A program made the position numbers and the translations under genes. A stretch of DNA of 64,000 nucleotides from Magallana gigas (taxonomy: Eukaryota): NCBI RefSeq assembly GCF_963853765.1, contig NC_088855.1:20088001-20152000 (forward strand). The letters run 5' to 3'. The notes under the pieces are model-generated. The model saw only the letters and a list, made by a program, of their open reading frames with translations. It did no database searches and was not told the origin of the DNA. Below, one piece after another: positions 20,336-64,000 of the stretch (positions within the stretch are counted from its first letter, which is position 1; each line of letters begins with the position of its first letter).

Positions 20336-20388
<53 letters not shown>

Positions 20389-26360: not shown

Positions 26361-26477
26361 ACCGGAAAGAGCATCGGAAGTGCAATCGTATAAAAATTGA
26401 GAGACATACGATAAAACCTTACTCCGTCCCCTGCTGGTGTTTTTCCTTTCTCTTCAACCACAGAGAACAGAAAGAGA
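26361..26477 (+). promoter_or_regulatory. Promoter and non-coding exon 1 of Met-rich gene P1
   Basis: ACCGGAAA (26361), CGGAAGT (26375), TATAAAAA (26389), donor GA|GTGAGT at 26477/8. Confidence 0.6.
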
Positions 26478-26648
26478 GTGAGTAAAATGCAGTAGCCTCT
26501 ATTATCAGTGAAGTATTCCTCAAAGGAATTGGTTTACATTACTTTATTTTAAATCTCAATATGTATTATAAGATGTTTTTCAAGTTTGCCACCTTTTGCA
26601 ATGTTAAGCTTGTAGTAATATGACTCATATGTTTTATTTTAGTTGACC

Positions 26649-28503
26649 ATGCACTACTTTGGTATATTCACTTTTCTGCTTTTTGTTGGAGCTCATGGAT
26701 TTGTTCTTCGTAAGTAGAAGTTCATTTTTGAGTTCAGCAGCATCCTTTGGGTTTCCTCATTGTTTCTATAGTCTGTCAAAATATTTACGCTGGACATTTT
26801 CTTAAATTATTCTATACTTTAATATTGATACCTCTGGGTTGAAATTATATCCATTCAATAGTATGAAAAAAAACCCCAAGATTTTACATTTGAAACACTC
26901 CTTAGGTTTTAATACACGGTTTAAAATAAAAAGTCTACGGGGATTTTCATTACAAGCGAGATGAAAGTACCCATATGAAAACTTTGAAAAATTAATTGTA
27001 CGAGGTATTCCGATTGACCGATTGAAGTGGAGAAGAGATGTAAACATTTCCCATTATAAATTTCCGTGAGAATTTTTTTTCGTTCCTGTGAATTTTTCCG
27101 AGTGAAAAAAAGATAATGTGCCAATTCAGATATCTTTAATATTTTCCCTTTCATCGATATTTCAATTGCATTCTTTCACAGGTATGTATGTTTCTATGAA
27201 AAAATCGTTCAAATGTGCCGCATGAATATCTTGGGACAGAAACTTTATTCAATTTCAAACAGTAAAATGAGTTTTGATTAGTTCAGGAAAAAAAATCAGA
27301 ACACTACATATAAAATATGTTGAATCAAGGGTTTCAAGTTATCTAAAAACTTAACGTTACATCTCATCATTTCAATTTCAAGAAATGTTTAATTAGTTTA
27401 ATGTCATTACGGTGAATTGTTTAACTTTTTTTTTAACCAAGAAAGACCGACAACTGTGGTTAAAGCATTGAATGGAGAGACCGTGATGAATTCTGGGCCA
27501 CCAATTGGCAGTCCGGACCAGTCAACTCAGAACCAGAACCGCTTTATGAGGGACCCAACCATCCTTGATGCTAGAAGAAACAGAGCTAGCCCAGTGATAG
27601 TTTCAGCGAACGCCATGATGCCAAACAAGAATAGAATTATAGCTTCTCCAGGTTCGAACAATATGGCACAGGAAGCGTCTAATGTTAACATGTCAGATAT
27701 GGTGGCCATGATGATGAACATGATGAGTAACGAGCCAAATATGGCTGACGTGATGGCCGACAACACTGCAAAAGCAGACATGATAAATGCCTTATCGTCG
27801 GCCACTGAAGTAATGTCAAAACTGAAAGCCAACATGAATCAACCAAGAAGACCCAATATGCAGTCACCAACTAAAACATTGCCTTCGATAGAAAATTTGG
27901 GATACATAGTGCCATCAATGATGAATGCTAACATACCGTCTGGTGCCAATATGATGACGGGTACCAATATGATGCCAGCTATAGGTTCAGGATCCAACTT
28001 TATCCCCACAGAATCTCAAGGACCCTCAAATAGTTACATTAATATTAGTCCAAGGCGTAAGTTCTCTACAAGTTTGTATAAAACTAATATATTTTTGTGG
28101 ATATTTAGCTGTTTAGTTTTTTAAGCCTTAAAACCATCATTTGTCTGTAGTCACCATTTCGAGGGCCATGACCATGTGACTAAAAAATGTCTAAACCAGG
28201 AATATACATTTCAAAATCTAAAAAAAAGCATTATTAATAAAACAAAAAAAAACTCCTAAAAAGGAACGTTGTATGAGATTGTCATCTTAAAAAAAGGCAT
28301 GGTGTGTTATATTACAATTTGTTAGCTATTAATGTTTTATTAATATTTTTGTTAGATTTGTAAATGATAGAAAAAAAGAAAGAAATGAAATCATCAATTT
28401 TAGTCTCATTTTTATTTCATCAATCAGAATTAATCACCTGATACGACTGTTCTATTGAAAGAAATCAAAAATTCAGGTTTTTATCTTTTTTTTAGGATAT
28501 TAA
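26649..28503 (+). CDS. Secreted Met/Asn/Ser/Pro-rich protein P1, 227 aa; exons 26649-26709, 27442-28056, 28496-28503
   Basis: The signal-peptide exon MHYFGIFTFLLFVGAHGFVL ends at C|GTAAGT (phase 1). It joins a 615-nt Met-rich exon (MVAMMMNMMSNEPNM...) ending at C|GTAAGT. The next exon gives RRY*. Confidence 0.72.
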
Positions 28504-29765
28504 GACGACGAAAATCCTGCAGGTAAAACTCTCAACATTTCTTATTGTCTAAAATCTTTTGGGGAAAATTAAGCAATGAAAAATGAATTCAATTATTATT
28601 GAAACAGATCTTAATCAAATTTTGCACAAATGCATTGTCCTGATCGCAAAGATTTCCTATTTAAAGGACAGGTATGATTTTAAAATTTTCATTTGAAGGG
28701 GATGATGGGAATCAAAAAGAAGAAAGACTATCTCCGTGATTGTATATATATTTACATCTTGAAATAATTAAATAAATATTCATTTGTGTACGCAGCCTGT
28801 TTTTTTTTATTTCATTTGATTTGTACAGCGATTCACTATTACATTATTATAATAAGAACACTAGTTTTCTGAGAAAATATCACCAAAATCCTTTTTATTT
28901 CTTGCATATCATAATTCCATGCAATCTATATTTGTTTATTATGTATATTTATGTTCATAATTTGCAGACTGATATAAAAGATGCCCAAAAGCATTTTAAA
29001 GAAAACAGTTAGGGTTATTTGACGGACAAAAATAAGTGTGAAGAAGCTTTCATGAAATGATTTTTCCGAATATTTTTATTTCCGAAAGATATTTTACTTA
29101 ATCTTATTTTTTTCACAGACAATGGTCAGTATAAACTATGAGTAAATATGTAATTTTTAAATTCGTATCAATTTATTATTATTATTGCCTATTATTTTAT
29201 TTTTAGAAGGAAACCAAAAAGCTGAATTTCAGATCAGAACATCGAATTCATTCCTTAACAACAGGAATAAGAATATATTTTAATAACGAAAAGTGCATTT
29301 ACTTTATTAATAGCAAAACATGAATTTGGCCTATAATTGCAAATGAAAGAGGTAAAATTTATCAACTAACATTGTCATTTCTTGTGCTAATCTTAAATTT
29401 CTTTAAAAAATTAATATATAAGGCCTTTTATTATGTTATAGGCATTTTTAATCATGCGTTTTCCGCATGACAACCTCAGAATAAATACTGAAGGGTGTCG
29501 GCTCCTTTTTACATCAAATAATGGTTGTAAGAATATAAGTTTCTGAAATGCTGTCATATTTTCAGCACTTTGTTTACTAGCACACGCTACTTAAGCGTAG
29601 AAAAACACCTTAGTGTTTTTGATACTTCATAAAATGAAACTTTATAATATGAACCAGAAACGCAATAAGTAAAACAGTATTTGGTATTGTATACATAATA
29701 TTTTAAATCGAAAATAACAAAATACAGTTTTCATTGTCTTCTTGGATAAGCAAGAGCAGCTCTTT

Positions 29766-32733
29766 CTACCATACTACAAAAATTCAAAAGAAAATATTAG
29801 AAGACAATTGCAATTTTCTAAAGTTGATGAAATAATGATTACATTTTAAATGATATAAAAGGAAAAGAAAAAGAACTTACGTCTCATCATGGAACCTGAT
29901 AAAAAAGTACAAATTGTATCAGGACAATATCACCAATAAGACATTTGTCCGTTAATGATTAAGGAGCTCCTGTTTATATTTTAAAAGTGAAAATTTATAA
30001 ATATTAAAATTTTCTTTACCTTTTCCATTATTGACCATTCCTGATGGATATCCTGGTCCCAATATATTTCCCATCATTCCTGGTCCCATTTTATTTCCCA
30101 TCATTCCTGGTCCCATAGAATTTCCCATAGCAGGTATCATTGCATTTCCCATCATACCGTTCATTCCAGGTGTCATCATGCTTCCCATTGCGTTAGGCAT
30201 ATTAGTCATTGCAGGCATCATTTGCATTGGGACCATTTTTGGAGAAGGAATCATAATTTGAGGACCTCCCATCATCATGGGTGGCATCATCATGTTTGGT
30301 CCTGCCATCATTGATCCTTTCATTCCCGAGTTCATTCCATTCATCATTGAGGCAGCAGCCATCATCATACCCATATTTATAGGTGACATTGGGATTCCTC
30401 CCATTCCATTCATTCCCATGTTTCCTCCCATTCCACTTCCCATACCAGGTGTCATGACCATCATATCACCGGCACCAGCACCGCCAGATGACACCAGTGT
30501 ACCACCTCCATTGGCTCCGCCTACCATAATCATCATTTTAGAGCCAGCATTAGCGCCTCCACCAGCAGCGCCACCTTCAAACTCTCCTCCTTCAACTTCA
30601 GCGGGCTGCGCTGGCTCTGCTGGTTGGGGTGGTGCTGGCATTGCTGCCTCGCCTCCTGCACCCATACCACCTGCACCCATGCCTTGTCCCATTTGACCAC
30701 CGTTTCCCATTGGCATCATTTCTCCCCCAGCCATCATTTGTCCTTGCATACCACCTGCCATCATACCCCCTGGCATCATTGCTCCTGACATCATACCAGA
30801 GGCAGGTTCAGGGGCTGACATCATAGGACCCTGATTCATTCCAGAGGATTGACCGTTCATCATTGAGCCTGGCATCATTCCATTTGACGAGGAACCTGGC
30901 ATCATACCAGAAGCTGGTTCAGGAGCTGGCATCATTTGACCCTGGTTCATACCGGGTGGGTTATTCATCATTGCACCGGGCATCATTCCATTTGAAGGGC
31001 CTTGCATCATTGATCCGGGCATCATACTTGACGTTGCCGAGTTCATTGCGTTTGGCATCATTCCTTGAGCTGGCTCAGGGGCTGGCATCATGTTTCCAGT
31101 CATCATTCCATTTGGTGAGGAACCTGGCATCATTGATCCGGGCATCATTCCTGGTTCAGGGGCTGGCATCATGGGTCCCTGATTCATACCATTTGGAGAC
31201 TGCGAGTTCATCATGTTTCCGGGCATCATTCCATTTGGTGAGGAACCTGGCATCATTGATCCGGGCATCATTCCTGGTTCAGGGGCTGGCATCATGGGTC
31301 CCTGGTTAATACCATTTGGAGACTGTGAGTTCATCATGTTTCCGGGCATCATTCCATTTGGTGAGGAACCTGGCATCATTGATCCGGGCATCATTCCTGG
31401 TTCAGGGGCTGGCATCATGGGTCCCTGATTCATTCCATTTGAAGATTGTGAGTTCATCATGTTTCCAGGCATCATTCCATTTGGTGAGGAACCTGGCATC
31501 ATTGATCCGGGCATCATTCCTGGTTCAGGGGCTGGCATCATGGGTCCCTGATTCATTCCATTTGAAGATTGTGAGTTCATCATGTTTCCAGGCATCATTC
31601 CATTTGGTGAGGAACCTGGCATCATTGATCCAGGCATCATTCCTGGTTCAGGGGCTGGCATCATGGGTCCCTGATTCATACCATTTGGAGACTGCGAGTT
31701 CATCATGTTTCCGGGCATCATTCCATTTGGTGAGGAACCTGGCATCATTGATCCGGGCATCATTCCTGGTTCAGGGGCTGGCATCATGGGTCCCTGATTC
31801 ATACCATTTGGAGACTGTGAGTTCATCATGTTTCCGGGCATCATTCCATTTGTTGAGGAACCTGGCATCATTGATCTGGGCATCATTTCTGGGGCTGGTT
31901 CGGGATATGGCATCATGGGTCCCTGATTCATACCATTTGGAGACTGAGAGTTCATCATTTTTCCGGGCATCATTCCATTTGGTGAGGAACCTGGCATCAT
32001 TGATCCGGGCATCATTCCTGGTTCAGGGGCTGGCATCATGGAACCCTGGTTCATACCAGATGACATTGCATTAATTATACCTTGCATAATTCCTGGCATT
32101 GCTGGTGAAGATGGTTCTGGTGCAGGCATATTACCTGGTCTGTTCATCATATTACCGGGCATACCCATATTAGGCATTCCATTACTGGACATACCCATAT
32201 TAGACATACCAATACCAGACATACCCATATTAGTCATTCCGCTACCAGACATACCCATATTAGGCATTCCATTAGCAGGCATACCCATATTTGGCATTCC
32301 ATTTCCAGACATACCCATGTTAGGCATTCCATTTCCAGACATACCCATGTTGGGCATTCCATTGCCTGGCATACCACTACCAGGCATACCGCCAGGCATA
32401 TTGTTGCTTCTCCTGCGTCCTGTGACAATGAAATAAAGTTTAATTCATTTGATAATAAATTTTTGAGAATTTTTAGAATTTCTTCAAAAAGTATCAAAAG
32501 TATACAGTGTTTCACCTGATCCTTTATATTCGAAAAAATATATAAAAATATATACATATGAGATTTGATCATCATTTTAAGCATATACTTTTTTTATATA
32601 ACTGATACTCTGGTTTATTTACATACACATGATAAGAACTAAAGACAAACAAAAGCTAAGTACCATACACTCCAGCCTGGGCACCGGAAACAGCGAGTAG
32701 AATGACAATGAAAGACATGGTATGCGACACCAT
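29766..32733 (-). CDS. Large secreted Met/Gly/Pro-rich repeat protein (MGP), ~830 aa; exons 32733-32664, 32419-30020, 29895-29881, 29773-29766
   Basis: Signal peptide MVSHTMSFIVILLAVSGAQA-GVYG in a 70-nt phase-1 exon, a 2400-nt open exon, a 15-nt micro-exon (GSMMR) with TTTTATCAG/GTAAGT, and a putative last exon giving LW* (least certain part). Confidence 0.8.
31070..32045 (-). repeat. Coding 123-bp (41-aa) tandem repeat in MGP, 7 full units plus a partial unit
   Basis: MMPAPEPGMMPGSMMPGSSPNGMMPGNMMNSQSPNGMNQGP units, near-identical at DNA level (e.g. anchors 31159 and 31282). Confidence 0.92.
32140..32375 (-). repeat. Coding 30-bp (10-aa) repeat GMPNMGMSGN, about 7 units, at the MGP N-terminus
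   Basis: ATACCCATAT/GTT...GGCATTCC recurs every 30 bp. Confidence 0.85.
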
Positions 32734-33533
32734 CTGTAAAGAGTAAATACCAAAAATCACTTTATAACTCTCTCTACCTATTTGTATGGATTGAAAGTGG
32801 AACATTTATTCATTTTCTTTAAAATGGCAATTCATTTGTTTTATTTGGTTCATCTGTTGTCTATCCTAATTCATTCAGTTCATAACTAGTTGACGATAAT
32901 AAAATATTTCAAACTCAGTAAGTTGAACAGTCTCAAAATGTGTAGGATATAATATGTAAAACTAATATCAAGGACACACGAGACGTATATTTCATTATTG
33001 TACAATTTTTTTCTATCTCCACAATTGGAGGATTTCCACTGCGTAATTCCGTAATGATATTTAATTTCATACGATATATTTTACATATTTTGATATGCAT
33101 GAAAATTTATCTAAAATAAGGAACCTCTCGTGTGTCTTTAAGACTGGGTGCGTATTAAGTTTTACAATCCAAGATTTTACTGAGCTTAAATATGAACAGC
33201 TCTGACTATTCAAGCTATATATATTATTTAATATGTTTAACCATATATGATGCTGGGGGAAATGATGGATCAGGAATAGGCATAATAATGAAAACAAACA
33301 ACAACTTAAAAAATTAAAGACAAATCATTTTTTTTGTTTATTTTTGCACTTTGCAATATAGATATTCTTAATAATCAGTACTATGAAAAAAATCAATAAC
33401 CGATAAACAATTATTTGTTAATCAAAATTCAGGTAAGATTTATTGTTATATAAGTTGTATGCCCCATTCTGCTTTATAAAGGCATACATATAGGTGGTAT
33501 AAAAAGAATTACTTCTATGTATTATTGCCTTAC

Positions 33534-33632
33534 CTTAAATTTGTGGTAGTGGTCTATTGAAATCTTTTCGATAAGAAGACCCCAACTTGTGTAAGATTTT
33601 TGTTTTTATACCTCCAATATTCTATTTCCGCC
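33534..33632 (-). promoter_or_regulatory. Promoter and non-coding exon 1 of MGP
   Basis: Minus strand: GGCGGAAAT (33632), TATAAAAA (33610-33603), then a ~45-nt exon ending AAG|GTAAGG at 33534/3. Confidence 0.55.
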
Positions 33633-35287: not shown

Positions 35288-35413
35288 ACCGGAAAAAATA
35301 CAAACTTTTCAAACTCTATATAAAGCATGTTCGACTTATAAATCTTTGCAGATCTTCACTCCTCATACCTCCAGTGTTCTTTGTTGCCAAGCGTGTCATC
35401 TCCTTTGATCACT
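35288..35413 (+). promoter_or_regulatory. MN1 promoter and non-coding exon 1
   Basis: ACCGGAAA 35288, TATATAAA 35317, donor CACT|GTAAGT 35413/4. Confidence 0.65.
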
Positions 35414-35699
35414 GTAAGTATGCTTATAGCTATGAACGTTTTATGATTTACTTAATTTTCATAATGTTATCATAAGAATATTTTGTTTGGTAAAATTAAT
35501 CAAATTTTAAAGGATGTTCTATGAACAATTTCTTACAACATTCTAGCTATGCTCAAAAGGTTTCTTGATTTATAATCAAATACCGTACATGTACAAAAAA
35601 ATAAAGAAAGAATAAGAGTTACGATAATCCACAACTTAGGCAATTAATTAACAGTGTTATAATAGATTTTATCCATTATCTTCAACGTTGTTGTTTCAG

Positions 35700-36566
35700 A
35701 TGGGTTTCTTCTTGATTGCCGTTACCAGTCTTATTGCTGTAGCTAGCGCCGCCCCAACTTATGGCGGAGGTAAAATAAAAAGCAAATTATACATATATTT
35801 AAATAACTCAAAATAGTAAAATGTTCGATATATGCCTTTTTTTATTGTTCAAATTAATGCCCTTTGTTGTAGGAAATGCTAACAATGGCAATAACATGAA
35901 TATGCCAGCGAATTTGGGAATGAACAACGGAGCTATGAATGCAATGCCCGCTAATATGAATATGGCAACTAACATGGCTAACAACATGATGATGCCAGCA
36001 AATATGGGCAACAGCATGAATGCCAATGTAGCCAATATGATGAACGCCGTTAACATGGGCAACAACATGAACACGATGCCAGCTAACATGAATAATGCTG
36101 TAAACATGATGATGGCAGCTAATATGGGTAACAACAACAATGGAGCCAATATGGCAAATATGATGAACGCCATGAACATGATGCCAGCTAATATGGGCAA
36201 CAACAACAATGGAGCCAATATGGCAAATATGATGAACGCCGTGAACATGATGCAAGCTAATATGGGTAACAACAAAGGAGCAATGAACGCTATGATGCCA
36301 GCTAATATGGGCAACAATAACAATGGAGCCACAAATGCCAACATGGCAAATATGATGAACGCCGTAAACATGATGATGATGAATGGAGGAAACAATGGAG
36401 CTATGGGAAATGCAATGATGCCAAACAACATGGGACCTAATAACAACGCTGGTATGAATATGAAATGTAAGTAGACGTTTATATGATTTCAACATTGAAA
36501 TTGTTTACGCAATAAAATTAAGATGATAACTTGTTGATTTATTTTACAGCCTCCTATGTGGGGTAA
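35700..36566 (+). CDS. Secreted Met/Asn/Ala-rich protein MN1, 226 aa; exons 35700-35769, 35873-36466, 36550-36566
   Basis: Signal peptide MGFFLIAVTSLIAVASA-APTYGG. PANMGNN-type repeats, with about 53 Met in the 197 codons of exon 3 by hand count. Ends MNMK-SSYVG*. All junctions are phase 1; AATAAA near 36647. Confidence 0.85.
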
Positions 36567-37225
36567 ACACCTGCAGATATTTTGTACCGTTGAACAAAAG
36601 ACCCAGAGGAGCTCTGTTATACGCCTTATTTTCATTTTTCATGAATAATAAAATACATTGCTAAAACACATTGTCTATTGTATTTTGTATTTCTCATTTA
36701 TAATTGCTATCAAAAGCATGCATTGATTACGAATAAAACCCAGAATTTTAAGGAGGCAGACTTTTGTTTTCATTTTGCATGTTTTGTGCATTCTAGTAAA
36801 ATGCCGTGTATTTATACCTTTTATGATTTATTTTGATTCATGCTTCAGTAGGTGTGCTTTGCAATTGTACTTTTATGAAGTGATGATAAAATGATGCTTT
36901 GTAGGAGTATGTTTTAACAAATTACTTAAAAGTATGCCTATGAACTACTATACACAAAATAACGCTATCATCAGGGTTATTTTTTAATGTACAGTATTCA
37001 TGGTACCATGCAATCTGTATTTGTAACAATCCAAATATACAGCAAAATTCTGTGCATTTTTTTCTTATTATAGATGACCCCACTAGAACTAGACGGTATA
37101 GTTTAGGTTTTATTTTACATATAAAGTAGACAATAATATTACTAATCAAATATTACAATTTGAGGAAAATCGGTCTTGTTGTATTCGTTTAATCTGCTTC
37201 GAAGTGCGGAAAATGTCAATTAACT

Positions 37226-39313: not shown

Positions 39314-39439
39314 ACCGGAAAAAATACAAACTTTTCAAACTATATATAAAGCATGTTCGACTTATAAATCTTTGCAGATCTTCACTCCTCATACCTCCAG
39401 TGTTCTTTGTTGCCAAGTGTGTCATCTCCTTTGATCACT
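39314..39439 (+). promoter_or_regulatory. MN2 promoter and non-coding exon 1
   Basis: ACCGGAAA 39314, TATATAAA 39343, donor 39439/40. Confidence 0.65.
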
Positions 39440-39732
39440 GTAAGTATGCTTATAGCTATGAACGTTTTATGATTTACTTAATTTTCATAATGTTATCATT
39501 AGAAATATTTTGTTTGGTAAAATTGATCAAATTTTAAAGGATGTTCTATGAACAATTTCTTACAACATTCTAGCTATGCTCAAAAGGTTTCTTAATTTAC
39601 AATCAAATACAGTACATGTACAAAAAATAAAGAAAGAAAAAGAAAAAAGAGTTACGATAATCCACAACTTAGGCAAATAATTAACAGTGTTATAGTAGAT
39701 TTTATCCATTATCTTCAACGATGTTGTTTCAG

Positions 39733-40597
39733 ATGGATTTCTTCTTGATTGCCGTTACCAGTCTTATTGCTGTAGCAAGCGCCGCCCCAACTTATGGCGG
39801 AGGTAAAAAAAAAAGCAAATTATACATATATATAGATAACTCAAAATAGTAAAATTGTTCGACATATGCCCTTTTTTATTGTTCAAATTAATGTCCTTTG
39901 TTGTAGGAAGTGCTAACAATGGCAATAACATGAATATGCCAGCGAATATGGGAATGAACAACGGAGCTATGAATGCAATGCCCGCTTATATGAATATGGC
40001 AGCTAACATGGCCAACAACATGATGATGCCAGCAAATATGGGCAACAACATGAATGCCAATGTAGCCAATATGATGAACACCGTTAACATGGGCAACAAC
40101 ATGAACACGATGCCAGCTAACATGAATAATGCTGTAAACATGATGATGGCAGCTAATATGGGCAACAACAATGGAGCCAATATGCCAAATATGATGAACG
40201 CCATGAACATGATGCCAGCTAATATGGGCAACAACAACAATGGAGCCAATATGGCAAATATGATGAACGCCATTAACATGATGCCAGCTAATATTGGCAA
40301 CAACAAAGGAGCAATGAACGCTATGATGCCAGCTAATATGGGCAACAACAACAATGGGGCCACAAATGCCAACATGGCAAATATGATGAACGCCGTAAAC
40401 ATGATGATGATGAATGGAGGAAACAATGGAGCTATGGGAAATGCAATGATGCCAAACAACATGGGAACCAATAACAACGCTGGCATGAATATGAAATGTA
40501 AGTAGACGTTTATATGATTTCAACATTGAAATTGTTTACGCAATTAAATTCAGATGTTAACTTGTTGAGTTATTTTACAGCCTCCTATGTGGGATAA
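39733..40597 (+). CDS. Secreted Met/Asn/Ala-rich protein MN2, 225 aa; exons 39733-39802, 39907-40497, 40581-40597
   Basis: Near-identical to MN1: MDFFLIAVTSLIAVASA-APTYGG...MNMK-SSYVG*. Confidence 0.85.
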
Positions 40598-40791
40598 ACA
40601 CCTGCAGATATTTTGTACCGTTGAACAAAAGACCCCGAGGAGCTCTGTTATACTCCTTATTTTCATTCTTCATGAATAATAAAATACATTGCTAAAACAC
40701 ATTGTCTATTGTATTTTGTATTTCTCATTTTTAATAGTTATCAAAAGCATGCATTGATTACGAATAAAACCCAGAATTTTAAGGAGGCCAA

Positions 40792-45626: not shown

Positions 45627-45739
45627 GTAAGTGTGGTTCAACCTCTTTTAAAAAATTTAAGGTGCGAAAATAATAGATAGAAATTTTCATCAAATTTTGA
45701 TCAATTTTTTTTAAAACTTAGGTATTAATTCCGGCTTTA

Positions 45740-45875
45740 NNNNNNNNNNNNNNNNNNNNNNNNNNNNNNNNNNNNNNNNNNNNNNNNNNNNNNNNNNNNN
45801 NNNNNNNNNNNNNNNNNNNNNNNNNNNNNNNNNNNNNNNNNNNNNNNNNNNNNNNNNNNNNNNNNNNNNNNNNNN
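45740..45875. other. Assembly gap (136 N) in MN3 intron 1
   Basis: Run of N characters. Confidence 1.
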
Positions 45876-45901
45876 ACAAATTTTCAACATTATTGTTTTA
45901 G

Positions 45902-46738: not shown

Positions 46739-47749
46739 ACACATGTGGATATTGTGCCAATAACAAACGTCCCGAGGAGCTCTGATTTACGCCTTATTTC
46801 ATATTTCATATTTAATAAAATGCATGGCTAACACATTATGCAGTTTCTTGTACTTTTTATGCCAACCATATCAATATTTTGTGATTGTTTTTTCATGAAA
46901 ACGCCAACTAAACATAAACAGCAACATATCGTAAACGTTTAGGAAGTTAAAGAATAAAGTACTTGAAAACAAATTATATTATTTGTTTTAGACAACTATT
47001 AAATTATGAACTAAAAATGAATATACATAAACGGGTATAAATAATGTGTGTTATGACCTGAATGCTGGTTTTATTGTTTTGATGTTGCTGTAACAATACT
47101 TACAAGGTTTAAACAAAATCATATATAATTGACAAAATATTATGTAATATCGCACCATCGTCTAATAACATTTTTAAGTTAAGATTTATTGTAAAAAAGT
47201 TTAAACCGCGATTGTTTACTTATTGTACTTATATCTAAAAGTATATTCAAACAATGAAGATTTCCTCAAAATGAACAGATATGATGCCTACTGCTTTGAA
47301 GGTTACAGTTACAAGATTGAGAGTCGCTTTCAAAGCATATGACTATCTAAGCAAAAGTAAATCATAATTTTTATTTGTTTTTTGTGTAACCGTTTGCAAA
47401 CTTAACTAAATTTTAAATCATGGTGGTTACTAGTGTAAAACATATGGTTAAGACTTTTTCTTTATTAATCGTATTCGTTGTTATAAGACAAAATTGACCC
47501 GTTTAAATCTACCAAACAAACAAAAATATTGTTTTTGACTAATTAAAGCCTACTGAAAACATTAAAAACAAAATAATATATGGCAATCAATTGAAATGTT
47601 TTGATTTTGTTCACGATGAACATGAAAAATAATGAAAAATGATGTATAATTTAGACTAAGCTTATAAAAAAAAAAAAAAAATGACAATAATAAAAAAATA
47701 AATGTAAACCTTATCTGCATAACTGACCTTTGGAAACTCTGTTAATTAC

Positions 47750-52007: not shown

Positions 52008-52126
52008 ATCAGAAAATATGAAGTTCGGAAACTATATATAAAGCTCGTTCGTATCAGAGTCTTTACAGACCTTTGCCTTTCGTTCCTCCAGTGTTCTTCG
52101 TTACCAAACGATTCATTATCTTTAAA
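52008..52126 (+). promoter_or_regulatory. MN4 promoter and non-coding exon 1
   Basis: TATATAAA at 52035, degenerate ATCAGAAA 27 bp upstream, CGGAAA abutting the TATA box, donor AAA|GTAAGT 52126/7. Confidence 0.6.
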
Positions 52127-52331
52127 GTAAGTACCTACGTATAGTTGAAAACAAAGTGACTCTTCTCAAATAATCTTTAATAATAGAAAGAGAAAAAAGT
52201 CCTGACATTTCATAATATCTCAAAGAACTAAAACAAAATTGAAAAACGGTTTTAAATAATTTGTTTATAGTTGTTATTTCAGATTTTTACAAGTTTTACA
52301 AATATTTGTAAGACTATCATTTCTATTTCAG

Positions 52332-53101
52332 ATGGGTTTCATTTTGATGACCGTTACTTGTCTTATTGCTTCAGCAAGTGCCTTTGCAACCTACGGGGGT
52401 AAATGTTTTAAAAGATGTTTCTATAATAACTGGATTAACAAAATTGTTCTATTTCGTTTATTTTATTTGATTTATCTAAAAACCCTATCTTTTAGGAAGA
52501 GCAATTAATGGCAACAACGCCAACATGAATGCCGCCATTAACACGGTGCCAGTCAATATGGGACTGAACACTGGAGCAATGAATGCACTGCCCGCTAATA
52601 TGAATATGGCCGCCATGAATATAATGGCAGCTAACATGGCTAACAACATGAACAGAATGCCAGTAAATATGGCCAACATCAATGGCGCCATGAACGTGAT
52701 GCCAAGTAATTTGGGAGTGAACATGGGCAACAACATGAACACAATGCCAGCTAATATGAATAATCTTGTGAACATGATGATGCCCACCAATAACAATGCC
52801 AATATGCTGAACAATTTGATACCAGTTAATTTGGGCAACAGAAACAATGTAGCCAGGAATGCCAATATGATGAACGCCGTGAACCTGATGTTGCAGAATG
52901 GTGGAAACAATGGAGTTTTGGGCAATGCAATGATGCCAAACAACATTGGAAATATGGGACCAAATACCAATGTTGGTATAAACATGAAATGTAGGTTACC
53001 TTTAATGCGATTTTCGTCATTCAAATTGTAATGGTGTACTCTACCCAAATCAAAATACTAATTTGCTGATTTACTTTACAGCCGCCTACGCAACCTATTA
53101 A
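52332..53101 (+). CDS. Secreted Met/Asn-rich protein MN4, 193 aa; exons 52332-52398, 52496-52990, 53082-53101
   Basis: MGFILMTVTCLIASASA-FATYGG-R...INMK-SAYATY*. The core is more Leu/Val/Ile-substituted than in MN1-3. Confidence 0.83.
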
Positions 53102-53785
53102 ACACAATCCAGATGTTTGTACCATCAACGAAAGACCCCGAGGAGCTCTGTCTTGTTCTTCATAGAAAATTAAATTGCATTCCAGAAACATTTTATATGT
53201 TGTGCTCTGTATTTTTTCTTGCTATTTAAAAGTAACTTGTATCGATAGTCTGCGATTCTTTTCTAGATAAAGCCAATTTATAGTAAGCAGCTATTAAGCG
53301 TAAAGGTATTGCATAACAATAATAAAACAATATGCTCAAACAAACAGCATTTATATTCGGAAAACGTTTTCGATTTTATCATGACACAAAGATCAAATGA
53401 ATACTACATTAAATTAACAAAATGTAGGTTTGACAGTAGCTGTTCTTTCTATTTGATGAAACGCTGATTTGATGGGGGGAAATGCTGAAGTTTATTACAA
53501 ATTCTAGGCAAGGAGTAAAATTTAGAAATCAAAATCAAGGACAACATAATGAAATAAAATTTAGATACTTGAACAAAAAAACTAATTGAACATTTTCCGC
53601 CAGATAGTTAAACTAAAATCCCACTTTTCCAAACATCTTTAAAAATCTTGAGTTTTGAAAATGGAGTCTTTTTACTGTTATTTAAGTACATGTTATAATT
53701 TTGAAATTTCTTTGCAAACCTACTTTTCGTTGTCTTTAAGATTTTTTTATGGTACAAGCCGATTGCCTTTTTAGGTATTAATATT

Positions 53786-56954: not shown

Positions 56955-57071
56955 ATTAGAAAAATAATTTTCTAAACTATATATAAAGCATGGTCTTATC
57001 AAAAACTTCACAGTCCTTTGTATTTCGTTTTCTCTGTGAGCTACGTTGCCAAGCATTAAATTATCTTTAAA
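56955..57071 (+). promoter_or_regulatory. MN5 promoter and non-coding exon 1
   Basis: TATATAAA 56980. Upstream block TTTTGATCACTCTGCAGAA shared with MN4. Donor AAA|GTAAGT 57071/2. Confidence 0.6.
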
Positions 57072-57195
57072 GTAAGTACCTACCTATGGAGGTATTAAAT
57101 ATTTTGAATTTAGCACAAGAATTAAGTAGTAGAAACATAATGTTTTGTTGCATATATCTTCTCCTTTCGTTATATTTGAAAGGTTTTTGTTTCAG

Positions 57196-57942
57196 ATGGG
57201 TTTCTTTTTGATGGCCGTTACTTGTCTTATTGCAACAGCAAGCGCCTTTCCAACATATGGCAGTGGTAAATGTTTTTAAAAGAATATATCTACAAATATA
57301 ATGTACGAACTACTAAAATTCTTCCATATTTGAATTTATTTCAATTTTTTTTTAAGGAAGAGCAAATAATGGCAATAATGGCAACAACAATGCAGCCATT
57401 AACATGCTGCCTGTGAATATGGGACTAAACACTGGAGCAGTGAATACAATGCCCGCTAATATGAATGTAGCCGCCGTGAATATGATGGCGACTAACATGG
57501 GCAACAACTTGGCAATGCCAGGTAATATGGGCCTGAACAACAATGGCGCTTTGAACATCATGCCAGGAACTATGGGTATAAATATGATGCCAGCCAATAT
57601 CGGCATCAACATGAACAATATACCAGCTAACAGGTATAATGCTGTAAACATGATGCTAGCAGCTAATATGGGCAACAACAACAATGGAGCCATTAATGCC
57701 AATATGATGAACGCTGCGAACATGATGATGGTGAATGGCGTAAATAATGGAGCTATGGGCAATATAATGACCCCAAACAACATTGGAAATATAATGGGAC
57801 TAAATACCAATGCTGGTATGAATATGAAATGTAAGTTAGCTTGAATACAAATATTTTGAAAACTCTAATGGATTATAGACGTTTAAAAATACTAACATGA
57901 AGTGTTTTTGTTTATTTTACAGCCGCCTATGCAACCTATTAA
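57196..57942 (+). CDS. Secreted Met/Asn-rich protein MN5, 187 aa; exons 57196-57265, 57357-57830, 57923-57942
   Basis: MGFFLMAVTCLIATASA-FPTYGSG-R...MNMK-SAYATY*. Confidence 0.83.
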
Positions 57943-60900
57943 ACACAATGCAGAGGTTTGTACCATCAACGAAAGACCCCGAAGAGCTCGGTTTTATTCT
58001 TCATAGATAATAAAAATACATGGCAATATTATATACTGTTTTGTTTTCCTATTATTTAAATATTGATTTCTTACAAGTTCTTTTTTCATGAGAACACTTA
58101 CAATTTAGCGTGCCTTTTGACATACTTATATATTGGATTTTATTTGATGTATAAGACAATGTGGACAATATATTCAAATCCATTATTTGTAGTATGGTAA
58201 AGAATTAATAATGATTCGAAATAAACTTGATAAACAGCAAAGATGTTTTTAACTTTGCAAGTGTCGCTGTGCGTCTAATCTTAGCATAGATTTACGATAT
58301 TATTAGAATATTTATTGCTGAGTGACATGCAATTTCTTATAAACATTATCTTAAATTTCATATTTCCAAATAAGTTTTTGATATAATTTCCAAAAGTTTA
58401 TGACAATAATATTTATTTATAGAAGGACAAGGGGGGAAAGTTCACGGTCGTTTATTTTTTTAAATCAAAGTACTCAAAGTCCTGGAAAGCACTAAGCCAG
58501 CCTTATTGCTTCTTTTTCAAATGTTAATTGTTAATATTTTTAACTCATAATTATACAGAAAGTATAAACAAAATTTCATGAAAATGCATGATATGTATGA
58601 GACCCTGACCATACCTTTTCGATCAATTTGAAGAGAGGAGTTTGTAATGCATATTAACTGATCAGTCAGCCCACGGACCGATTAATTAGGTTTTGATAAC
58701 CGAATTGTGCTTTGTAATTTGATTGTGCTTGTGTACATTGGAATTCTGGAAAGGAATAAGACAGTCCGTGTTAACGAAATTCGAAGTTATGAAACCGATT
58801 GTCACTGGGTTCCGGAGTCCGCATATATATATTTCTCGAATTTGAATTTGAGGATATATCTTGACAGTTGTTTGAAATTCAGAGAGCGAACTTTGCAAAG
58901 TTAAGAGTCTAATAAATAAATAGGTGTTCAGTCATACATTGCACCGCTGCAAGCCTGTTTCTTATCCTACAGTCATAAAAGTAAAGTGTACAAACTCAAA
59001 TATACACCCGCATAATAGTATTGTTCCGGAAACTATATATCTTGTATATTTATAGAGTATTCGCTTTTGATCAAAATTAATATTCTGCTGGCTGACTTTA
59101 TTACTTTTTTTAAAAGCTAACATTGTTATTTATATATATATTTAATATAAATAAAGTGAACGGCAAGTTTTGAATACACTTAAAAAAAAAGACTGACCGT
59201 ACCTTTTCACCAATTAAGACCATAAAATCTGACTAAATGTCATTGAATTAAAAAATTCACAAAATGCAAGAGAAAAACACGACATGAATCAATAGATCAA
59301 AGTTACACAACAAATATTTTAAAAATATCATGTTAATAAATTTGTCGGCCTTTGAGGGTCTCAAATTTTGTCAATGTAAACTTTTGATATAGCGACAAGA
59401 CAAGGAAATATCTCTGATCGCATGCTTTGACACTCCGAGATCAGCACCACTGACCATCCTTTGTTTACATCGCACAGCGGTCATCCAACATGTGTCTAAT
59501 ATTAGCAGCATGGAATGCTTTGTGGCATGTTTAGTTGTGTAATCGGCAATGCACCCTCAGATTTCACTAATATTGTGAAAGTTTGCAATTTTTTCTGATC
59601 TTGACTAAATAAACCCACAACTCTACGTTCTTTTTGCAAAACGTGGAATCTAAATACTAACTTAGGGATTACCACGATTACCATGATCTTGCTTTTTTTA
59701 GAATACGAGCGGTCGGTCAGCATGATCACTATGTGGCGCTTATAAAAAGATCATGAGATTGGTGCATCCCTAATAAGCGCTAGCGCATGCGCTGGATAAA
59801 AAACATCTAAAAGTACATTTTTCATTAATTTGCAAAGTATTGGTTTGTGCCAACTTCAATTAGGGCTTTATGACAATTCGAAAATTCTATCCCGTGTTTA
59901 CTTTCTTTATTTAAATGCATTTTTAAAATATTGGCGGAATGAGGTATTAAAGGTGTTTTTTTAAATAATTTGTTCTAAATATTTTGTACAAAGGCAGAAG
60001 GTTTTTATTGAATCACAAATCATGTAAAGTAATAAAAGATAGATTTATATCCCAACTGCTTTATGTATAAATGTGTTTCAACTTTAGACCTGTACTTTAG
60101 ATTTAGCAATGCTATTTAACGTAGATTGTGTAATATTGATTTGTCTTTGGGAGTCCAACATTTTTTGTGCACCGTAAAGTGCAACTACTTGATAGAATCT
60201 GAACTGTAGCTCCAAGGACGTCCACCCGATTTTTTGCAGACCAGAGCAACAGACCAGCAGCTGAAACTTATTCTTAAAATAAAATTCTTCATTTTTTCAG
60301 TTCCAAGCATTTAAAAAAAATTTGGATAATGCAAAATATATCGGTTATCACGTATCTTCAAAGTGTTTAAATTTATATGGTTTAGCTACAAGAATGTATT
60401 CATCATATAAGTCAAAAGCAAAGATCAATATCAGTCTGTTTTTATTTTTTAAAAAATAAGATATCTAATTGTTGATAAATCGTCATATGAGTCATACAAA
60501 TTTACTAACTTGAACAGGATGTGAATGTTAAATCTGGATTGCCATTTGTATTGTAGACAGGAAACCATATCTAGTATCGTATTGTTTACATATTTAACAT
60601 GTAATAACATTATAAAACTCATCTTATGGTAGATTTTCAACATAGCAACGATTTATAAATTTTAAAATTCTTCAGCTTACTTTTTATATATAAAACGAAT
60701 TACATGTATTGTTGATTCAACATGCATTAGCTAAGAACCATTAACAGACTCTAATTCAAGTTATGACTTAACCCATTTAATCGTCATTTTAATATACAAC
60801 ATATTCAATGAAGTTCAATGAAGTTTTAAGCCTTTGCAATACATCGTAAGTCCTTTTCAAATAAAAAAAGAACATATTATGCAGCAATAGTTTTTTGAAA

Positions 60901-61522: not shown

Positions 61523-61647
61523 ACCGGAAAGTAATAATGTATTATACAACTATATAAACCCAAGTTTCGTTCTGAATCCTCACAACTTTATTTGTCATCC
61601 TCCGGAGTTCTTCGCTGTTCCAACGTTCTCTAGTTCCTTTGTTCATG
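61523..61647 (+). promoter_or_regulatory. MN6 promoter and exon 1
   Basis: TGAGTCA (~61460), ACCGGAAA 61523, TATATAAA 61551, donor ATG|GTAAGT 61647/8. This terminal ATG is in frame with exon 2. Confidence 0.62.
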
Positions 61648-62311
61648 GTAAGTAGAACTTAAGTGGACTGTATGGTCGTGGTCATTTTTACACTATACTA
61701 ATTTCCTTAACAAGAAGACTTCTGTATAAAAATATATAAAAATATTCAAATTTCAAAAGATAAAATATATGGTATTTTTCCTTATTGAATTAAAGCTTAT
61801 AGCTAAATACATCATATCTATAAAAAAAAGAGTTAAGAAAGATGTGATGGTTGATTTGTTGACAACCAAGCCCCCTTTATAGTTGAAAAAGATTTTCAAA
61901 GATCACACAACGTTGGCGATAAAGTCGTTTAGTATAATTCTTTAAAGCTGTAATAAATGATTTGTAGACATTTGTAAAATATGTACTTTGAGATTTTTTG
62001 TCTCTCTTGCTGATTATCTTACATCTTAGAATACTTTTATTTAAGAAGAAATATTTCTGAAGTTTAATAGTTTTCTTTTCGAGTTTTGTAAATTTGTCAT
62101 ATATGAAAGGAATACAAATCTTTCGAAGACACTTAATTTTGAAACATCGTTGTGTTTATGAATTTGTCATGTTTTGAAGGAAGACAAACACATATAAGAC
62201 ACTTTATTTTCAAACATTCAATCTTTGCTATTTTGAAAAAAAAGTGTCAGATTATTTTTTTCAAAGTTTATTTGACGTACTAATGAACTCTGCAATAATT
62301 CCTTGTTTTAG

Positions 62312-63531
62312 ATGGGTTCCTTCATTGTTGCTGTTTCATGCCTTTTTGCTGTCATTAGCGCTCGTCCCCAATATGGAAAAGGTAAATTTAAACATTTATT
62401 TTACTCTTATTAGAACTTTGATTAAAAAAATTGTTTAATAATTTTTTCCCTGTAAAATGAAGATAAAATCAAAGAGACAATTTTAATTTTTCTCTTTAAG
62501 GTGGTAATGTAGGCATGTCTAACATGATGATGAACATGATGCCAGCTAACATGGGCATGAACATGATGCCAGCTAACATGGGCATGAACATGATGCCAGC
62601 TAACATGGGCATGAACATGATCCCAGCTAACATGAACATGATCCCAGCTAACATGAACATGATCCCAGCTAACATGAACATGATCCCAGCTAACAGGGGC
62701 ATGAATATGGTGCCAGCTAACATGGGAATGAACATGATGCCAGCCAACATGGGAATGAACATGAAGAATGGAGCAATGAACATGATGATGCCAGCTAATA
62801 TGGGAATGAACATGATGCCAGCTGATATTGAAATGAGCATGCCAGCAGGTATGGGTAATAACAAAGGAGCAAATAACATGATGCCAATTGATATGGAAAT
62901 GAGCATGCCAGCCGGTATGGGTAACAACAAAGGAGCAAATAACATGATGCCAATAGATATGGAAATGAGCATGCCAGCTAATATGGGTAACGGAGCAAAT
63001 AACATGCCAATGAAGGTGGAAATGGACATGCCAGCTGCTAATGGTAATAACATGGGAGCAAATAACATGATGCCAATAGATATGGAAATGAGCATGCCGG
63101 CTGGTAATGGTAACAACAAAGGAGCAATGAACACCATGATGCCAGCTAATATGGGCATGAACATGATGCCAGCTAATATGGGCATGAACATGATGATGCC
63201 AGCTAATATGGGCAACATGATGATGCCAGCTAATATGGGCAACATGATGATGCCAGCTAATATGGGCAACATGATGAACAGAGCTATGAACATGATGATG
63301 ATGCCAATGAATATGGGTATGATGAATGGTGGAAACAATGGCGGTATGCCCAATGCTATGATGGGAAACATGATGGGAGCTGGTAACAACAAAATGAAAT
63401 GTAAGTACATAGGTCATATGTCTGTACAACTGCAAAAATTTAAATAAAATGATTTTTTGCGAGTACGTGTAAAAGAAAGTATTTTCCTATGTATATTGAT
63501 GTCTTGTTTTATCATTACAGCTCTCTATTAA
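62312..63531 (+). CDS. Secreted Met/Asn/Pro-rich protein MN6, 326 aa; exons 62312-62381, 62501-63400, 63521-63531
   Basis: MGSFIVAVSCLFAVISA-RPQYGKG; MMPANMGMN, MIPANMN and MMPIDMEMSMPAGMGNNKGANN repeats; ends NKMK-SLY*. AATAAA at ~63609. Confidence 0.85.
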
Positions 63532-64000
63532 GTTTTTAATACACCAACACACTGGATCATAGAGGAAGGACCCCGGGGATGAACTAGATTTTTTTCCATT
63601 GCACATTGAATAAAATTTGTATTCAAATTTAAACTGTTTATATTATTTTGTTTATAGTAAGGAGGGTTTAAAAATGTTTTTAATTCATTCTTTTCAAATG
63701 TGCATGTTCACTGCAATCAAAATGATACTTTCAATTCACACTTTAAATTCGGTTTTCGTTTACAAATTCATAATTTATCTCCCGTGATGCAACATGCGTT
63801 GACCTTATCTCATAGTAAAAAGAAAACATTAACCGAAACCAATATTTAAGATTAACATTGTATTATTTACAAAATATGGAAATGCTATCAAACGTATTCG
63901 GATTTAAGAAATGCTCATAGACTTGGACGTGTAGTTGTAGGAGATAATGTTGGAGGCCAATCTAAGGGTCCAGAAAGATTCTCTTATTCCTTGTGGTTGT

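What the first reader, a model, noticed from the sequence alone, without database searches (positions are those of the whole stretch)
26361..63620. Eight-gene cluster of secreted methionine-rich proteins: candidate biomaterial (ligament/shell/cement) locus
Seen: eight intact genes in 37 kb (P1, MGP, MN1-6). All have a TATA box, a non-coding exon 1, a 61-70-nt signal-peptide exon, one large phase-1 low-complexity exon and a tiny terminal exon. The products have no globular domain, and MN cores are roughly a quarter Met and a third Asn. Established: Met-rich structural proteins occur in bivalve extracellular materials (scallop abductin, Pinctada ligament Met-rich protein, Met-rich nacre protein MRNP34). 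Inference: a co-expressed family building an elastic or mineral-templating matrix. I do not recognise these PANM/NMMN sequences as any named protein.
Basis: partly seen in the sequence, partly recalled or inferred. Interest (0 to 1): 0.9.

Follow-up and report, generated by a model that had tools for sequence, protein, structure and literature searches.

The report
Oyster cluster of secreted methionine-rich proteins
Eight neighbouring oyster genes encode secreted, unstructured proteins made mostly of methionine with asparagine or glycine and proline; the genes are real and unusual, and probably supply hinge-ligament or shell matrix, but where they act has not been tested.

Summary
The stretch 26.4-63.6 kb carries eight genes: P1, MGP and MN1-6. 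Each has a TATA box, a short non-coding first exon, a 61-70-nt signal-peptide exon ending in phase 1, one large low-complexity exon whose length is a multiple of 3, and a tiny last exon.

Corrections:
- MGP lies on the minus strand and has an extra 15-nt micro-exon.
- P1's last exon is more likely 28151-28179.
- Met is 16-32% and Asn 20-31% across the MN proteins.

The assembly gap (45740-45875) lies in MN3's non-coding first intron. No coding exon touches it.

The window comes from an oyster, Magallana (Crassostrea) gigas or a very close relative. UniProt lists MN4 as an uncharacterised protein with the same splice junctions. MN paralogues show dN/dS of 0.16-0.34 in the coding frame only. AlphaFold2 predicts disorder.

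No Pfam family and no relative in another species was found, but those searches have blind spots. The nearest known proteins are Pinctada ligament proteins (LMP and an M/N-rich protein) and scallop abductin. The likeness is in composition and design; homology was not shown.

A role in ligament or shell matrix is plausible (about 0.55) but untested. The scan had already noted MGP on this same window (s1-361717).

The parts
26362..28260 (+). P1 gene. CCGGAAA 26362-26368; TATAAAAA 26389-26396; inferred non-coding exon 1 ending at 26477|GTGAGT; signal exon with CDS 26649-26709; large exon 27442-28056; preferred last exon 28151-28179 (protein ends ...SPRLTISRAMTM); AATAAA at 28236. Alternative last exon 28496-28503 (protein ends ...SPRRY).
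   Evidence: No Pfam match. AlphaFold2 mean pLDDT 56, with helices at residues 83-131 of the exon 3 translation.
29766..33617 (-). MGP gene, 830 aa, Met 25% / Gly 20% / Pro 15%. Signal exon 32733-32664; large exon 32419-30020 (2400 nt); micro-exon 29895-29881; last coding exon 29773-29766. Candidate promoters: TATAAAAA at 33610 with GGCGGAAAT upstream and an exon 1 donor AAG|GTAAGG, or TATATATA at 33223. Contains 7.9 copies of a 123-nt (41-aa) repeat at 31086-32058, 7.5 copies of a 30-nt repeat at 32151-32375, and an acidic stretch PAEPAQPAEVEGGEFEGG.
35289..36652 (+). MN1, 226 aa. CCGGAAA 35289; TATA 35317; exon 1 ends at 35413; signal exon 35700-35769; large exon 35873-36466; last exon 36550-36566; AATAAA at 36647.
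39315..40683 (+). MN2, 225 aa. CCGGAAA 39315; TATA 39341; exon 1 ends at 39439; exons 39733-39802, 39907-40497 and 40581-40597; AATAAA at 40678. Recent duplicate of MN1: 96-99% identical from about 400 nt upstream of the start site through the 3'UTR, with similarity lost about 100 nt after the poly(A) signal.
45503..46819 (+). MN3, 215 aa. CCGGAAA 45503; TATA 45528; exon 1 ends at 45627; intron 1 holds the assembly gap; exons 45902-45968, 46077-46637 and 46719-46738; AATAAA at 46814.
45740..45875 (.). Assembly gap (136 N) inside MN3 intron 1. It is non-coding, and no exon is expected in it by comparison with the paralogues.
52033..53174 (+). MN4, 193 aa. TATA 52033; exon 1 ends about 52126; exons 52332-52398, 52496-52990 and 53082-53101; ATTAAA at 53169. 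Matches UniProt A0A8W8K0W9 (M. gigas): exon 2 exact, exon 3 98%, same junctions.
56978..58014 (+). MN5, 187 aa. TATA 56978; exon 1 ends about 57071; exons 57196-57265, 57357-57830 and 57923-57942; AATAAA at 58009.
61524..63614 (+). MN6, 326 aa, Met 32%. CCGGAAA 61524; TATA 61551; exon 1 ends at 61647; exons 62312-62381, 62501-63400 and 63521-63531; AATAAA at 63609. Internal repeats of 27 nt (MPANMGMNM, 12 copies), 21 nt (5 copies) and 66 nt (5 copies).

Best explanation
This is a tandem cluster of eight protein-coding oyster genes (Magallana/Crassostrea gigas or a very close relative). Their products enter the secretory pathway and are released as intrinsically disordered, low-complexity, Met-rich polymers. 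They most likely act together as structural matrix of the shell apparatus. The non-acidic MN proteins look best suited to the hinge ligament (resilium).

**Proposed mechanism (inferred).**
- The six MN proteins (17-33 kDa mature size) are almost uncharged chains of Met, Asn, Ala and Gly. Tyr is confined to the first 3-4 and last 1-5 residues of the mature chain, and one Lys lies next to the C-terminal Tyr.
- These ends would be the cross-linking points, through tyrosine- or quinone-type links or Met-Lys chemistry. The flexible Met/Asn middle would then form the compliant strands of an end-linked network.
- MGP (81 kDa, Met/Gly/Pro, 41-aa PAPEPG-spaced repeats plus one acidic hinge) would be the large scaffold or mineral-contacting partner.
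- P1 would be an accessory component.

**Shown:** gene structure, secretion-type N-termini, purifying selection, disorder, shared promoter module and oyster origin.

**Inferred:** extracellular structural role, ligament as the site, and cross-linking through the termini.
For: **The genes are real and coding.**
- Splice sites, signal exons, TATA boxes and poly(A) signals are conserved across the paralogues.
- All eight large exons keep a length divisible by 3 despite many indels.
- dN/dS is 0.16-0.32 among the recent duplicates MN1-3 in the sense frame. Other frames give about 0.7-4.7, except the antisense frame that shares the wobble position.
- An independent public gene model for MN4 has identical junctions.

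**The products look secreted.** Each N-terminus has a hydrophobic core (Kyte-Doolittle 2.6-3.1 over 10 residues) followed by A-S-A, A-Q-A or A-H-G type sites.

**The products look disordered and domain-free.**

**The source is an oyster.** The KCTD7 open reading frame is 93.6% identical to C. virginica and 86.7% to O. edulis, and the NIF3-KCTD7-ProDH gene order is kept in C. virginica.

**Analogy with known ligament proteins.**
- In Pinctada fucata the two top LC-MS/MS hits of the insoluble ligament matrix are LMP (MMMKPD repeats) and pfu_aug1.0_1662.1.
- The C-terminal part of pfu_aug1.0_1662.1 is Met/Asn-rich. It contains NGGNN, as five of the six MN proteins do (MN5 has NGVNN), and ends in ...ASIY. 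MN proteins end in ...KSLY...SAYATY or ...SSYVG (PMC7591529 supplement 4).
- That paper notes that ligament proteins, unlike nacre and prism proteins, lack acidic regions. MN1-5 have 0-1 acidic residues.
- Abductin likewise has Tyr at its extremities, and both Tyr-Tyr and Met-Lys cross-links have been proposed for it (PMC9999432).

**Shared regulation is plausible.** CCGGAAA sits 27-29 nt upstream of the TATA box in P1, MN1-3 and MN6. The window has 18 CCGGAAR sites against 5.3 expected.
Against: - There is no expression, localisation or proteome evidence of any kind.
- No spliced transcript of these genes turned up in the protein collections.
- Similarity to the Pinctada ligament proteins rests on composition plus a few short motifs judged by eye. 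No alignment statistic supports homology.
- Met-rich regions also occur in Pinctada nacre and prism scaffold proteins, so the composition does not single out the ligament.
- MGP and MN6 carry acidic residues, which is more typical of shell-layer proteins.
- P1 and MGP are linked to the MN genes only by architecture and position.
- Signal peptides were judged by a heuristic, not by SignalP.
Confidence: 0.55

Rival explanations
1. Same kind of protein, different material. The cluster encodes insoluble framework proteins of calcified shell layers, periostracum, the ligament-valve interface, or the larval shell or cement, rather than the elastic ligament itself.
For: - Insoluble proteins with Met-rich regions were recovered from nacre, prism and ligament alike in Pinctada (PMC7591529).
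- MGP has an acidic hinge and 20 Glu. MN6 has D/E-bearing PIDMEMSMPAG repeats.
- Six diverged MN paralogues could serve different layers or life stages.
Against: - MN1-5 are almost free of acidic residues, and none has a chitin-binding or other matrix domain.
- The closest compositional match in the literature read here, an M/N-rich region, is a ligament protein.
Confidence: 0.22
2. Secreted non-structural proteins: for example a mucus, lubricant or adhesive component, or a sacrificial antioxidant or Cu(I)-binding Met-rich protein of the extrapallial or mucosal fluid.
For: - The proteins carry dense M-x-M and M-x-x-M spacing, with 42 M-x-M in MN6. From general knowledge, this resembles the Met motifs of Cu(I)-binding proteins, and Met can scavenge oxidants.
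- Nothing tested here ties the proteins to a solid material.
Against: - There are no His or Cys partners and no known metal-binding domain.
- Tandemly amplified, repeat-homogenised genes with TATA promoters are typical of bulk structural products.
- Tyr confined to the chain ends suggests cross-linking.
Confidence: 0.1
3. The low-complexity open frames are expanded microsatellite-like DNA and the 'genes' are prediction artefacts or pseudogenes.
For: - Antisense frames are also open (His-rich and Ile/Leu-rich), as expected for ATG/AAC/AAT-rich repeats.
- No transcripts were found in the collections.
Against: - Substitutions are frame-specific.
- All indels among the paralogues and in an allele are multiples of 3.
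- Signal exons, splice sites, promoters and poly(A) signals are conserved.
- UniProt holds a matching model for MN4.
Confidence: 0.03

Closest known systems
Pinctada fucata ligament protein pfu_aug1.0_1662.1_66071.t1 (PMC7591529, Fig. S3B)
   Same: - It was found by LC-MS/MS in the insoluble hinge-ligament matrix.
- Its C-terminal ~130 residues are dominated by Met and Asn.
- It contains NGGNN followed by M/G/N, as does the most conserved MN block (NG[GV]NNG in all six MN proteins).
- It ends in ...ASIY, compare MN ...KSLY and ...SAYATY.
   Different: - Its Met/Asn region is rich in Lys and Asp, whereas MN1-5 are nearly uncharged.
- It has a long N-terminal Asn/Gly repeat domain with Trp (PWDSQNGNGN) that the MN proteins lack.
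- The resemblance was judged by eye from the supplement. No statistical alignment or gene-structure comparison was possible.
Pinctada fucata LMP, ligament methionine-rich protein (Suzuki et al. 2019; sequence in PMC7591529, Fig. S3A)
   Same: - It is a secreted, extremely Met-rich tandem-repeat protein and a framework of the ligament.
- After the signal peptide comes Tyr-Gly and then basic residues (...VYSYGPRNRGK). Compare MGP ...GVYGRRRSNN and MN ...PTYGG.
- Tyr lies near the C-terminus.
   Different: - Its repeat unit is MMMKPD (charged, Lys/Asp/Pro). No such unit occurs here.
- There was no detectable sequence similarity in searches.
- Synteny could not be tested: in Pinctada the KCTD7 neighbourhood differs.
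Abductin (Argopecten irradians; Cao et al. 1997, as reviewed in PMC9999432)
   Same: - It is a small secreted elastomer of the bivalve resilium with unusually high Met.
- It is a random coil.
- Tyr lies at the extremities of the chain, and these are proposed cross-link sites.
   Different: - Abductin is about 58-60% Gly, with GGFGGMGGGX decapeptide repeats.
- The MN proteins have 9-12% Gly and 20-31% Asn, and no FGGMG or GGMGG motif.
MRNP34, the methionine-rich nacre protein of pearl oysters (Marie et al. 2012, cited in PMC7591529)
   Same: It is a Met-rich, low-complexity, secreted shell-associated protein of a pteriomorph bivalve.
   Different: It is a nacre protein, and oysters have no nacre.

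Membership tests
Abductin | Gly-rich (about 58-60 mol%) core built of GGFGGMGGGX-type repeats | tested here: not met
   Gly is 9-12% in the MN proteins and 20% in MGP. There are no FGGMG or GGMGG motifs.
Abductin | Signal peptide and Tyr residues at the extremities of a small repetitive chain | tested here: met
   In MN1-6, Tyr lies only 3-4 residues after the predicted cleavage site and within the last 5 residues. The exceptions are one internal Tyr each in MN2 and MN5.
Abductin | Protein of the resilium (inner hinge ligament) | not testable with these tools
   No expression or proteome data were reachable.
Pinctada LMP (ligament methionine-rich protein) | Tandem MMMKPD-type Met/Lys/Pro/Asp repeats | tested here: not met
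   There are no MMMKPD units. The MN proteins are 1-7% charged and MGP 4%.
Pinctada LMP (ligament methionine-rich protein) | Detectable sequence homology | tested here: inconclusive
   Searches returned no Pinctada protein. However, low-complexity bias filters, length windows and cluster representatives limit them. Only short N- and C-terminal motif likeness was seen by eye.
Pinctada ligament M/N-rich protein pfu_aug1.0_1662.1 | Met/Asn-rich C-terminal region with an NGGNN block and a C-terminal S-x-Y | tested here: inconclusive
   The motifs are present in both, but the sequences are low-complexity and no statistic was computed.
Pinctada ligament M/N-rich protein pfu_aug1.0_1662.1 | N-terminal Asn/Gly/Trp repeat domain | tested here: not met
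   The MN proteins have no Trp and no such domain.
Classically secreted protein | N-terminal signal peptide with hydrophobic core and small residues at -3 and -1 | tested here: met
   Heuristic only. The best 10-residue Kyte-Doolittle score is 2.6-3.1, with sites such as ASA|AP, AQA|GV and AHG|FV. SignalP was not available.
Any Pfam family | Match above threshold to a curated domain model | tested here: not met
   No family at E <= 0.01 for P1, MGP, MN1 or MN6.

The most novel reading that the evidence does not exclude
The MN proteins are a previously unrecognised class of bioelastomer. They would be nearly uncharged Met/Asn chains capped by Tyr (plus one Lys) at both ends, end-linked into the rubbery matrix of the oyster resilium, with MGP as the scaffold. 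They would have escaped every shell and ligament proteome because they contain almost no tryptic sites: MN1 has two Lys and no Arg in 209 residues. They may also be restricted to the Magallana lineage.
Probability: 0.25. Interest if true: 0.8.

Novelty: new variant of a known kind. Interest (0 to 1): 0.55.

Why it matters
**Open question it bears on.** Apart from scallop abductin and Pinctada LMP, the proteins that make bivalve hinge ligaments elastic are largely unknown. Oysters are the best-resourced bivalve genomes.

**What is unusual.** A compact eight-gene locus encodes chains that are 45-59% Met plus Asn, or 62% Met plus Gly plus Pro. That gives concrete candidates.

**A testable design rule.** Cross-linkable Tyr/Lys sit only at the chain ends, with a flexible, uncharged, oxidisable middle.

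**Why they may have been missed.** The near absence of Lys and Arg would explain their absence from trypsin-based shell proteomics.

**If the role is confirmed.** The sequences would be of interest for protein-based elastomers and for studying how Met oxidation tunes material stiffness.

**If it is not.** The locus remains an example of fast-evolving, repeat-homogenised secreted low-complexity genes.

Tried and rejected
1. **Word-indexed search of 5.8 billion proteins.** MN1 gave one hit, a Logan genomic contig of the same species that is an MN5 allele. MGP gave none.
2. **Profile of the six MN cores against 1.84 billion cluster representatives.** Only two hits came back, both unspliced genomic ORFs of the same species, for MN5 and MN4. 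Representatives can be short fragments and stand for 50% clusters, so absence from other oysters is not proven.
3. **ESM Atlas look-alikes for MN1 and MGP.** Only generic low-complexity neighbours scoring 0.70 or less.
4. **JGI metagenome scan with the MN alignment.** Nothing.
5. **Exact look-ups of ten window ORFs.** None is in the collection. Looking up the UniProt MN4 protein on contigs found nothing on record.
6. **Synteny walk from KCTD7.**
   - In Pinctada and Mizuhopecten, KCTD7 has other neighbours.
   - In C. virginica the NIF3-KCTD7-ProDH order is kept, but the 10-kb flank ends 3.4 kb past ProDH and shows no family member there. In the window P1 starts 3.7 kb past ProDH, so this is not far enough to decide.
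   - In O. edulis ProDH is not within 10 kb.
7. **Rfam.** No match in the window. The MN 3'UTRs have no consensus structure.
8. **Literature.** Ten full-text searches found no paper on Met/Asn-rich oyster proteins. The C. gigas larval/adult shell proteome paper mentions neither methionine nor ligament. Two run accessions were not found in any paper.
9. **Considered and rejected.** Byssal or adhesive-type proteins were rejected because there is too little Tyr, Lys and His. The antisense His-rich and Ile/Leu-rich frames were rejected as genes because the signal exon and splice signals exist only on the sense strand (+ for P1 and MN1-6, - for MGP).

Full report
**What is in the sequence.** Six-frame scanning shows eight long stop-free, compositionally extreme frames between 27.4 and 63.4 kb.
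- P1 (27402-28121, +) is Asn/Ser/Met-rich.
- MGP (29955-32444, minus strand) is Met 25%, Gly 20%, Pro 15%.
- Six plus-strand MN frames have Asn 21-32% and Met 16-33%.

Because the DNA is rich in ATG, AAC and AAT, antisense frames are open too, so openness alone proves nothing.

**Gene models.** Each MN frame is preceded, 90-120 nt upstream, by a 67-70-nt exon. It starts exactly at AG|ATG, encodes M-G-F-F-L-I-A-V-T-S-L-I-A-V-A-S-A-type hydrophobic N-termini, and ends in phase 1 at a GTAAA/GTAAG donor.
- Further upstream, MN1-5 share an alignable block holding TATATAAAG and a non-coding exon of about 70 nt that ends in GTAAGT. MN6 has the same parts at 61551-61647.
- The large exons all end ATGAAAT|GTAAG. 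They splice 82-120 nt downstream to a last exon coding 3-6 residues (SSYVG, SAYKAY, SAYATY, SLY).
- AATAAA or ATTAAA follows the stop by 67-81 nt.
- P1 and MGP follow the same plan. MGP needs a 15-nt micro-exon.
- For P1, an acceptor at 28151 fits the family pattern better than the acceptor at 28496. It gives a 94-nt intron and an AATAAA 57 nt after the stop.
- All eight large exons have lengths divisible by 3.
- tblastn finds no ninth copy or fragment in the window. Whether the cluster continues past 64 kb is unknown.

**The assembly gap.** N 45740-45875 lies between MN3's exon 1 donor (45627) and its signal exon (45902), so it is in a non-coding intron. The flanks align collinearly with MN1 and MN2 intron 1, which have 130 and 136 nt opposite the 136 N. 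No reading frame crosses the gap. Only the linkage of MN3's promoter and exon 1 to its coding exons depends on the join. The gap was left as it is.

**Are the genes real?** Several results say yes.
- Nei-Gojobori dN/dS among MN paralogues is 0.19-0.34 for most pairs.
- On nucleotide alignments of the recent duplicates MN1-3, the ratio is 0.16-0.32 in the sense frame. Other frames give about 0.7-4.7. The one exception is the antisense frame that shares the wobble position, as expected.
- MN1 and MN2 are a recent duplication. They are 96-99% identical from about 400 nt upstream of the start site through the 3'UTR, and similarity ends abruptly about 100 nt past the poly(A) signal.
- A Logan contig from another individual (L001) is an MN5 allele with introns. 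Its only exon 3 indel is 6 nt.
- Decisively for MN4, the 90% cluster of a genomic MN4 ORF contains UniProt A0A8W8K0W9, 'Uncharacterized protein, Magallana gigas'. Its residues 36-228 equal my MN4 model: exon 2 exact, exon 3 161/164, and the same ...ATYG|GRAI... and ...NMK|SAYATY junctions. Its 35-residue N-terminal extension reads through the non-coding exon 1 and looks like a longest-ORF artefact.

**Where the window comes from.**
- A single-exon KCTD7-like ORF at 4436-5227 (-) is 99% identical to a Logan cluster that includes C. virginica XP_022342361.2.
- It is 93.6% identical to the C. virginica locus, 86.7% to Ostrea edulis, 73% to Pinctada and 70% to Mizuhopecten.
- The order NIF3-KCTD7-ProDH is kept in C. 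virginica.
- Together with the MN4 match, this places the window in Magallana (Crassostrea) gigas or a very close relative.

**What the proteins look like** (compositions below are for the predicted mature chains).
- Predicted mature MN1-5 are 17-22 kDa, with pI 9.4-11. They are 45-59% Met plus Asn and 1-3% charged residues.
- MN6 is 33 kDa with 33% Met in the mature chain, built of MPANMGMNM, IPANMNM and MMPIDMEMSMPAGMGNNKGANN units.
- Tyr occurs only 3-4 residues after the predicted signal cleavage (xPxYGG) and in the last five residues. One Lys lies just before the C-terminal Tyr.
- MGP (81 kDa, pI 4.6) has 10-aa MPNMGMSGNG repeats and about eight near-identical 41-aa repeats spaced by PAPEPG. 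It also has an acidic PAEPAQPAEVEGGEFEGG hinge and a Met/Gly/Pro tail, and RRR follows the signal peptide.
- There are no Pfam matches.
- AlphaFold2 on the six-member MN alignment gives mean pLDDT 40.7 with no secondary structure.
- P1 is mostly disordered, with helices at residues 83-131 of its large exon at pLDDT 70-85.
- After composition correction, P1 and MGP are not alignable to the MN proteins or to each other.

**Regulatory hints.** CCGGAAA, which has an ETS-like GGAA core, lies 27-29 nt upstream of the TATA box in P1, MN1, MN2, MN3 and MN6. The window holds 18 CCGGAAR sites against 5.3 expected. MGP's distal candidate promoter has GGCGGAAAT in the same place. For P1, which is otherwise unrelated in sequence, this is modest evidence for common control. 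MN1-5 also share a 17-nt 3'UTR block without predicted structure.

**Relatives elsewhere.** Word-indexed and exhaustive profile searches returned only same-species genomic ORFs. Atlas and metagenome scans gave nothing. These blanks are soft, for three reasons.
- Cluster representatives can be short fragments.
- Candidates are limited to a window of lengths around the query.
- HMMER penalises biased composition.

Synteny walks could not reach the equivalent region in C. virginica or O. edulis. In Pinctada and Mizuhopecten the anchor genes are not syntenic.

**Comparison with what is known.**
- In Pinctada fucata, the insoluble ligament matrix yielded LMP (MMMKPD repeats) and pfu_aug1.0_1662.1. 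The C-terminal part of pfu_aug1.0_1662.1 is Met/Asn-rich, contains NGGNN and ends in ASIY.
- The authors note that Met-rich regions are common to nacre, prism and ligament scaffolds, and that only the ligament proteins lack acidic regions (PMC7591529).
- All six MN proteins keep NG[GV]NNG in their most conserved block and end in S-x-Y-type tails.
- LMP and MGP both show Tyr-Gly followed by basic residues after the signal peptide.
- Abductin has Tyr at its chain ends, and Tyr-Tyr or Met-Lys cross-links have been proposed for it (PMC9999432).

These are likenesses of design and composition. None of the defining repeats of abductin or LMP is present, so membership in those families is not claimed.

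**Verdict.**
- A co-located, probably co-regulated family of secreted disordered Met-rich proteins is well supported.
- An extracellular structural role is the best reading. I rate structural matrix of the shell apparatus, with the ligament as the most likely site, at about 0.55, and the ligament specifically at about 0.35-0.4.
- Nothing here tests that role.
- The near absence of tryptic sites is a concrete reason why such proteins could have been missed by shell proteomics.

Noticed in passing
window 11706-17650 and 18628-22668 (+); L005:3477-9088: Two tandem sets of proline dehydrogenase exons lie upstream of P1. Each set matches, exon by exon, the single ProDH gene beside KCTD7 in C. virginica. 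This points to a lineage-specific tandem duplication of ProDH (Pfam Pro_dh; tblastn).
   Followed up: partly
window 36598-36614, 40629-40645, 46766-46782, 53132-53148, 57973-57989: A 17-nt block, AAGACCCCGAGGAGCTC, lies about 30 nt after the stop codon in MN1-5 with 0-3 mismatches, and in a diverged form in MN6. It is conserved even between paralogues with dS above 0.5. There is no predicted RNA structure and no Rfam match.
   Followed up: partly
window 26362, 35289, 39315, 45503, 61524: CCGGAAA (an ETS-like core) sits at a fixed 27-29 nt upstream of the TATA box in P1, MN1-3 and MN6. MN4 and MN5 have degenerate versions (ATCAGAAA, ATTAGAAA).
   Followed up: partly
L001 versus window 57098-58075: An MN5 allele from another sequencing run differs by 4.7% in the large exon (22 substitutions plus an in-frame 6-nt indel; dN/dS 0.42). 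It differs by only 0-2.6% in the introns, the signal exon and the 3'UTR. The repeat exon is therefore the most polymorphic part of the gene.
   Followed up: partly
P0039 (UniProt A0A8W8K0W9) versus window 52033-52398: The public MN4 model starts 35 residues upstream of the conserved signal-peptide ATG, by translating through the non-coding first exon. This buries the signal peptide and is probably an annotation artefact.
   Followed up: no
window 2686-3027 (+), 4433-5227 (-); L005, L006, L003, L004: The NIF3-like and KCTD7-like genes are neighbours in this window, in C. virginica and in O. edulis. The KCTD7 neighbourhood differs in Pinctada imbricata (a retroelement) and in Mizuhopecten (thioredoxin-domain and 2OG-oxygenase genes).
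   Followed up: partly
window 42323-42536 and 53786-54032; 40829-40904: There are near-perfect two-copy tandem duplications of 110 and 121 nt, and a 31-nt repeat, in the spacers between MN genes. Their nature was not examined.
   Followed up: no
window 31086-32058 (-), 36214-36446, 40245-40477, 62809-63115: Tandem Repeats Finder reports the same 123-nt (41-aa) period in MGP, MN1, MN2 and MN6, although the sequences are not alignable. This may be coincidence or a shared length constraint.
   Followed up: no
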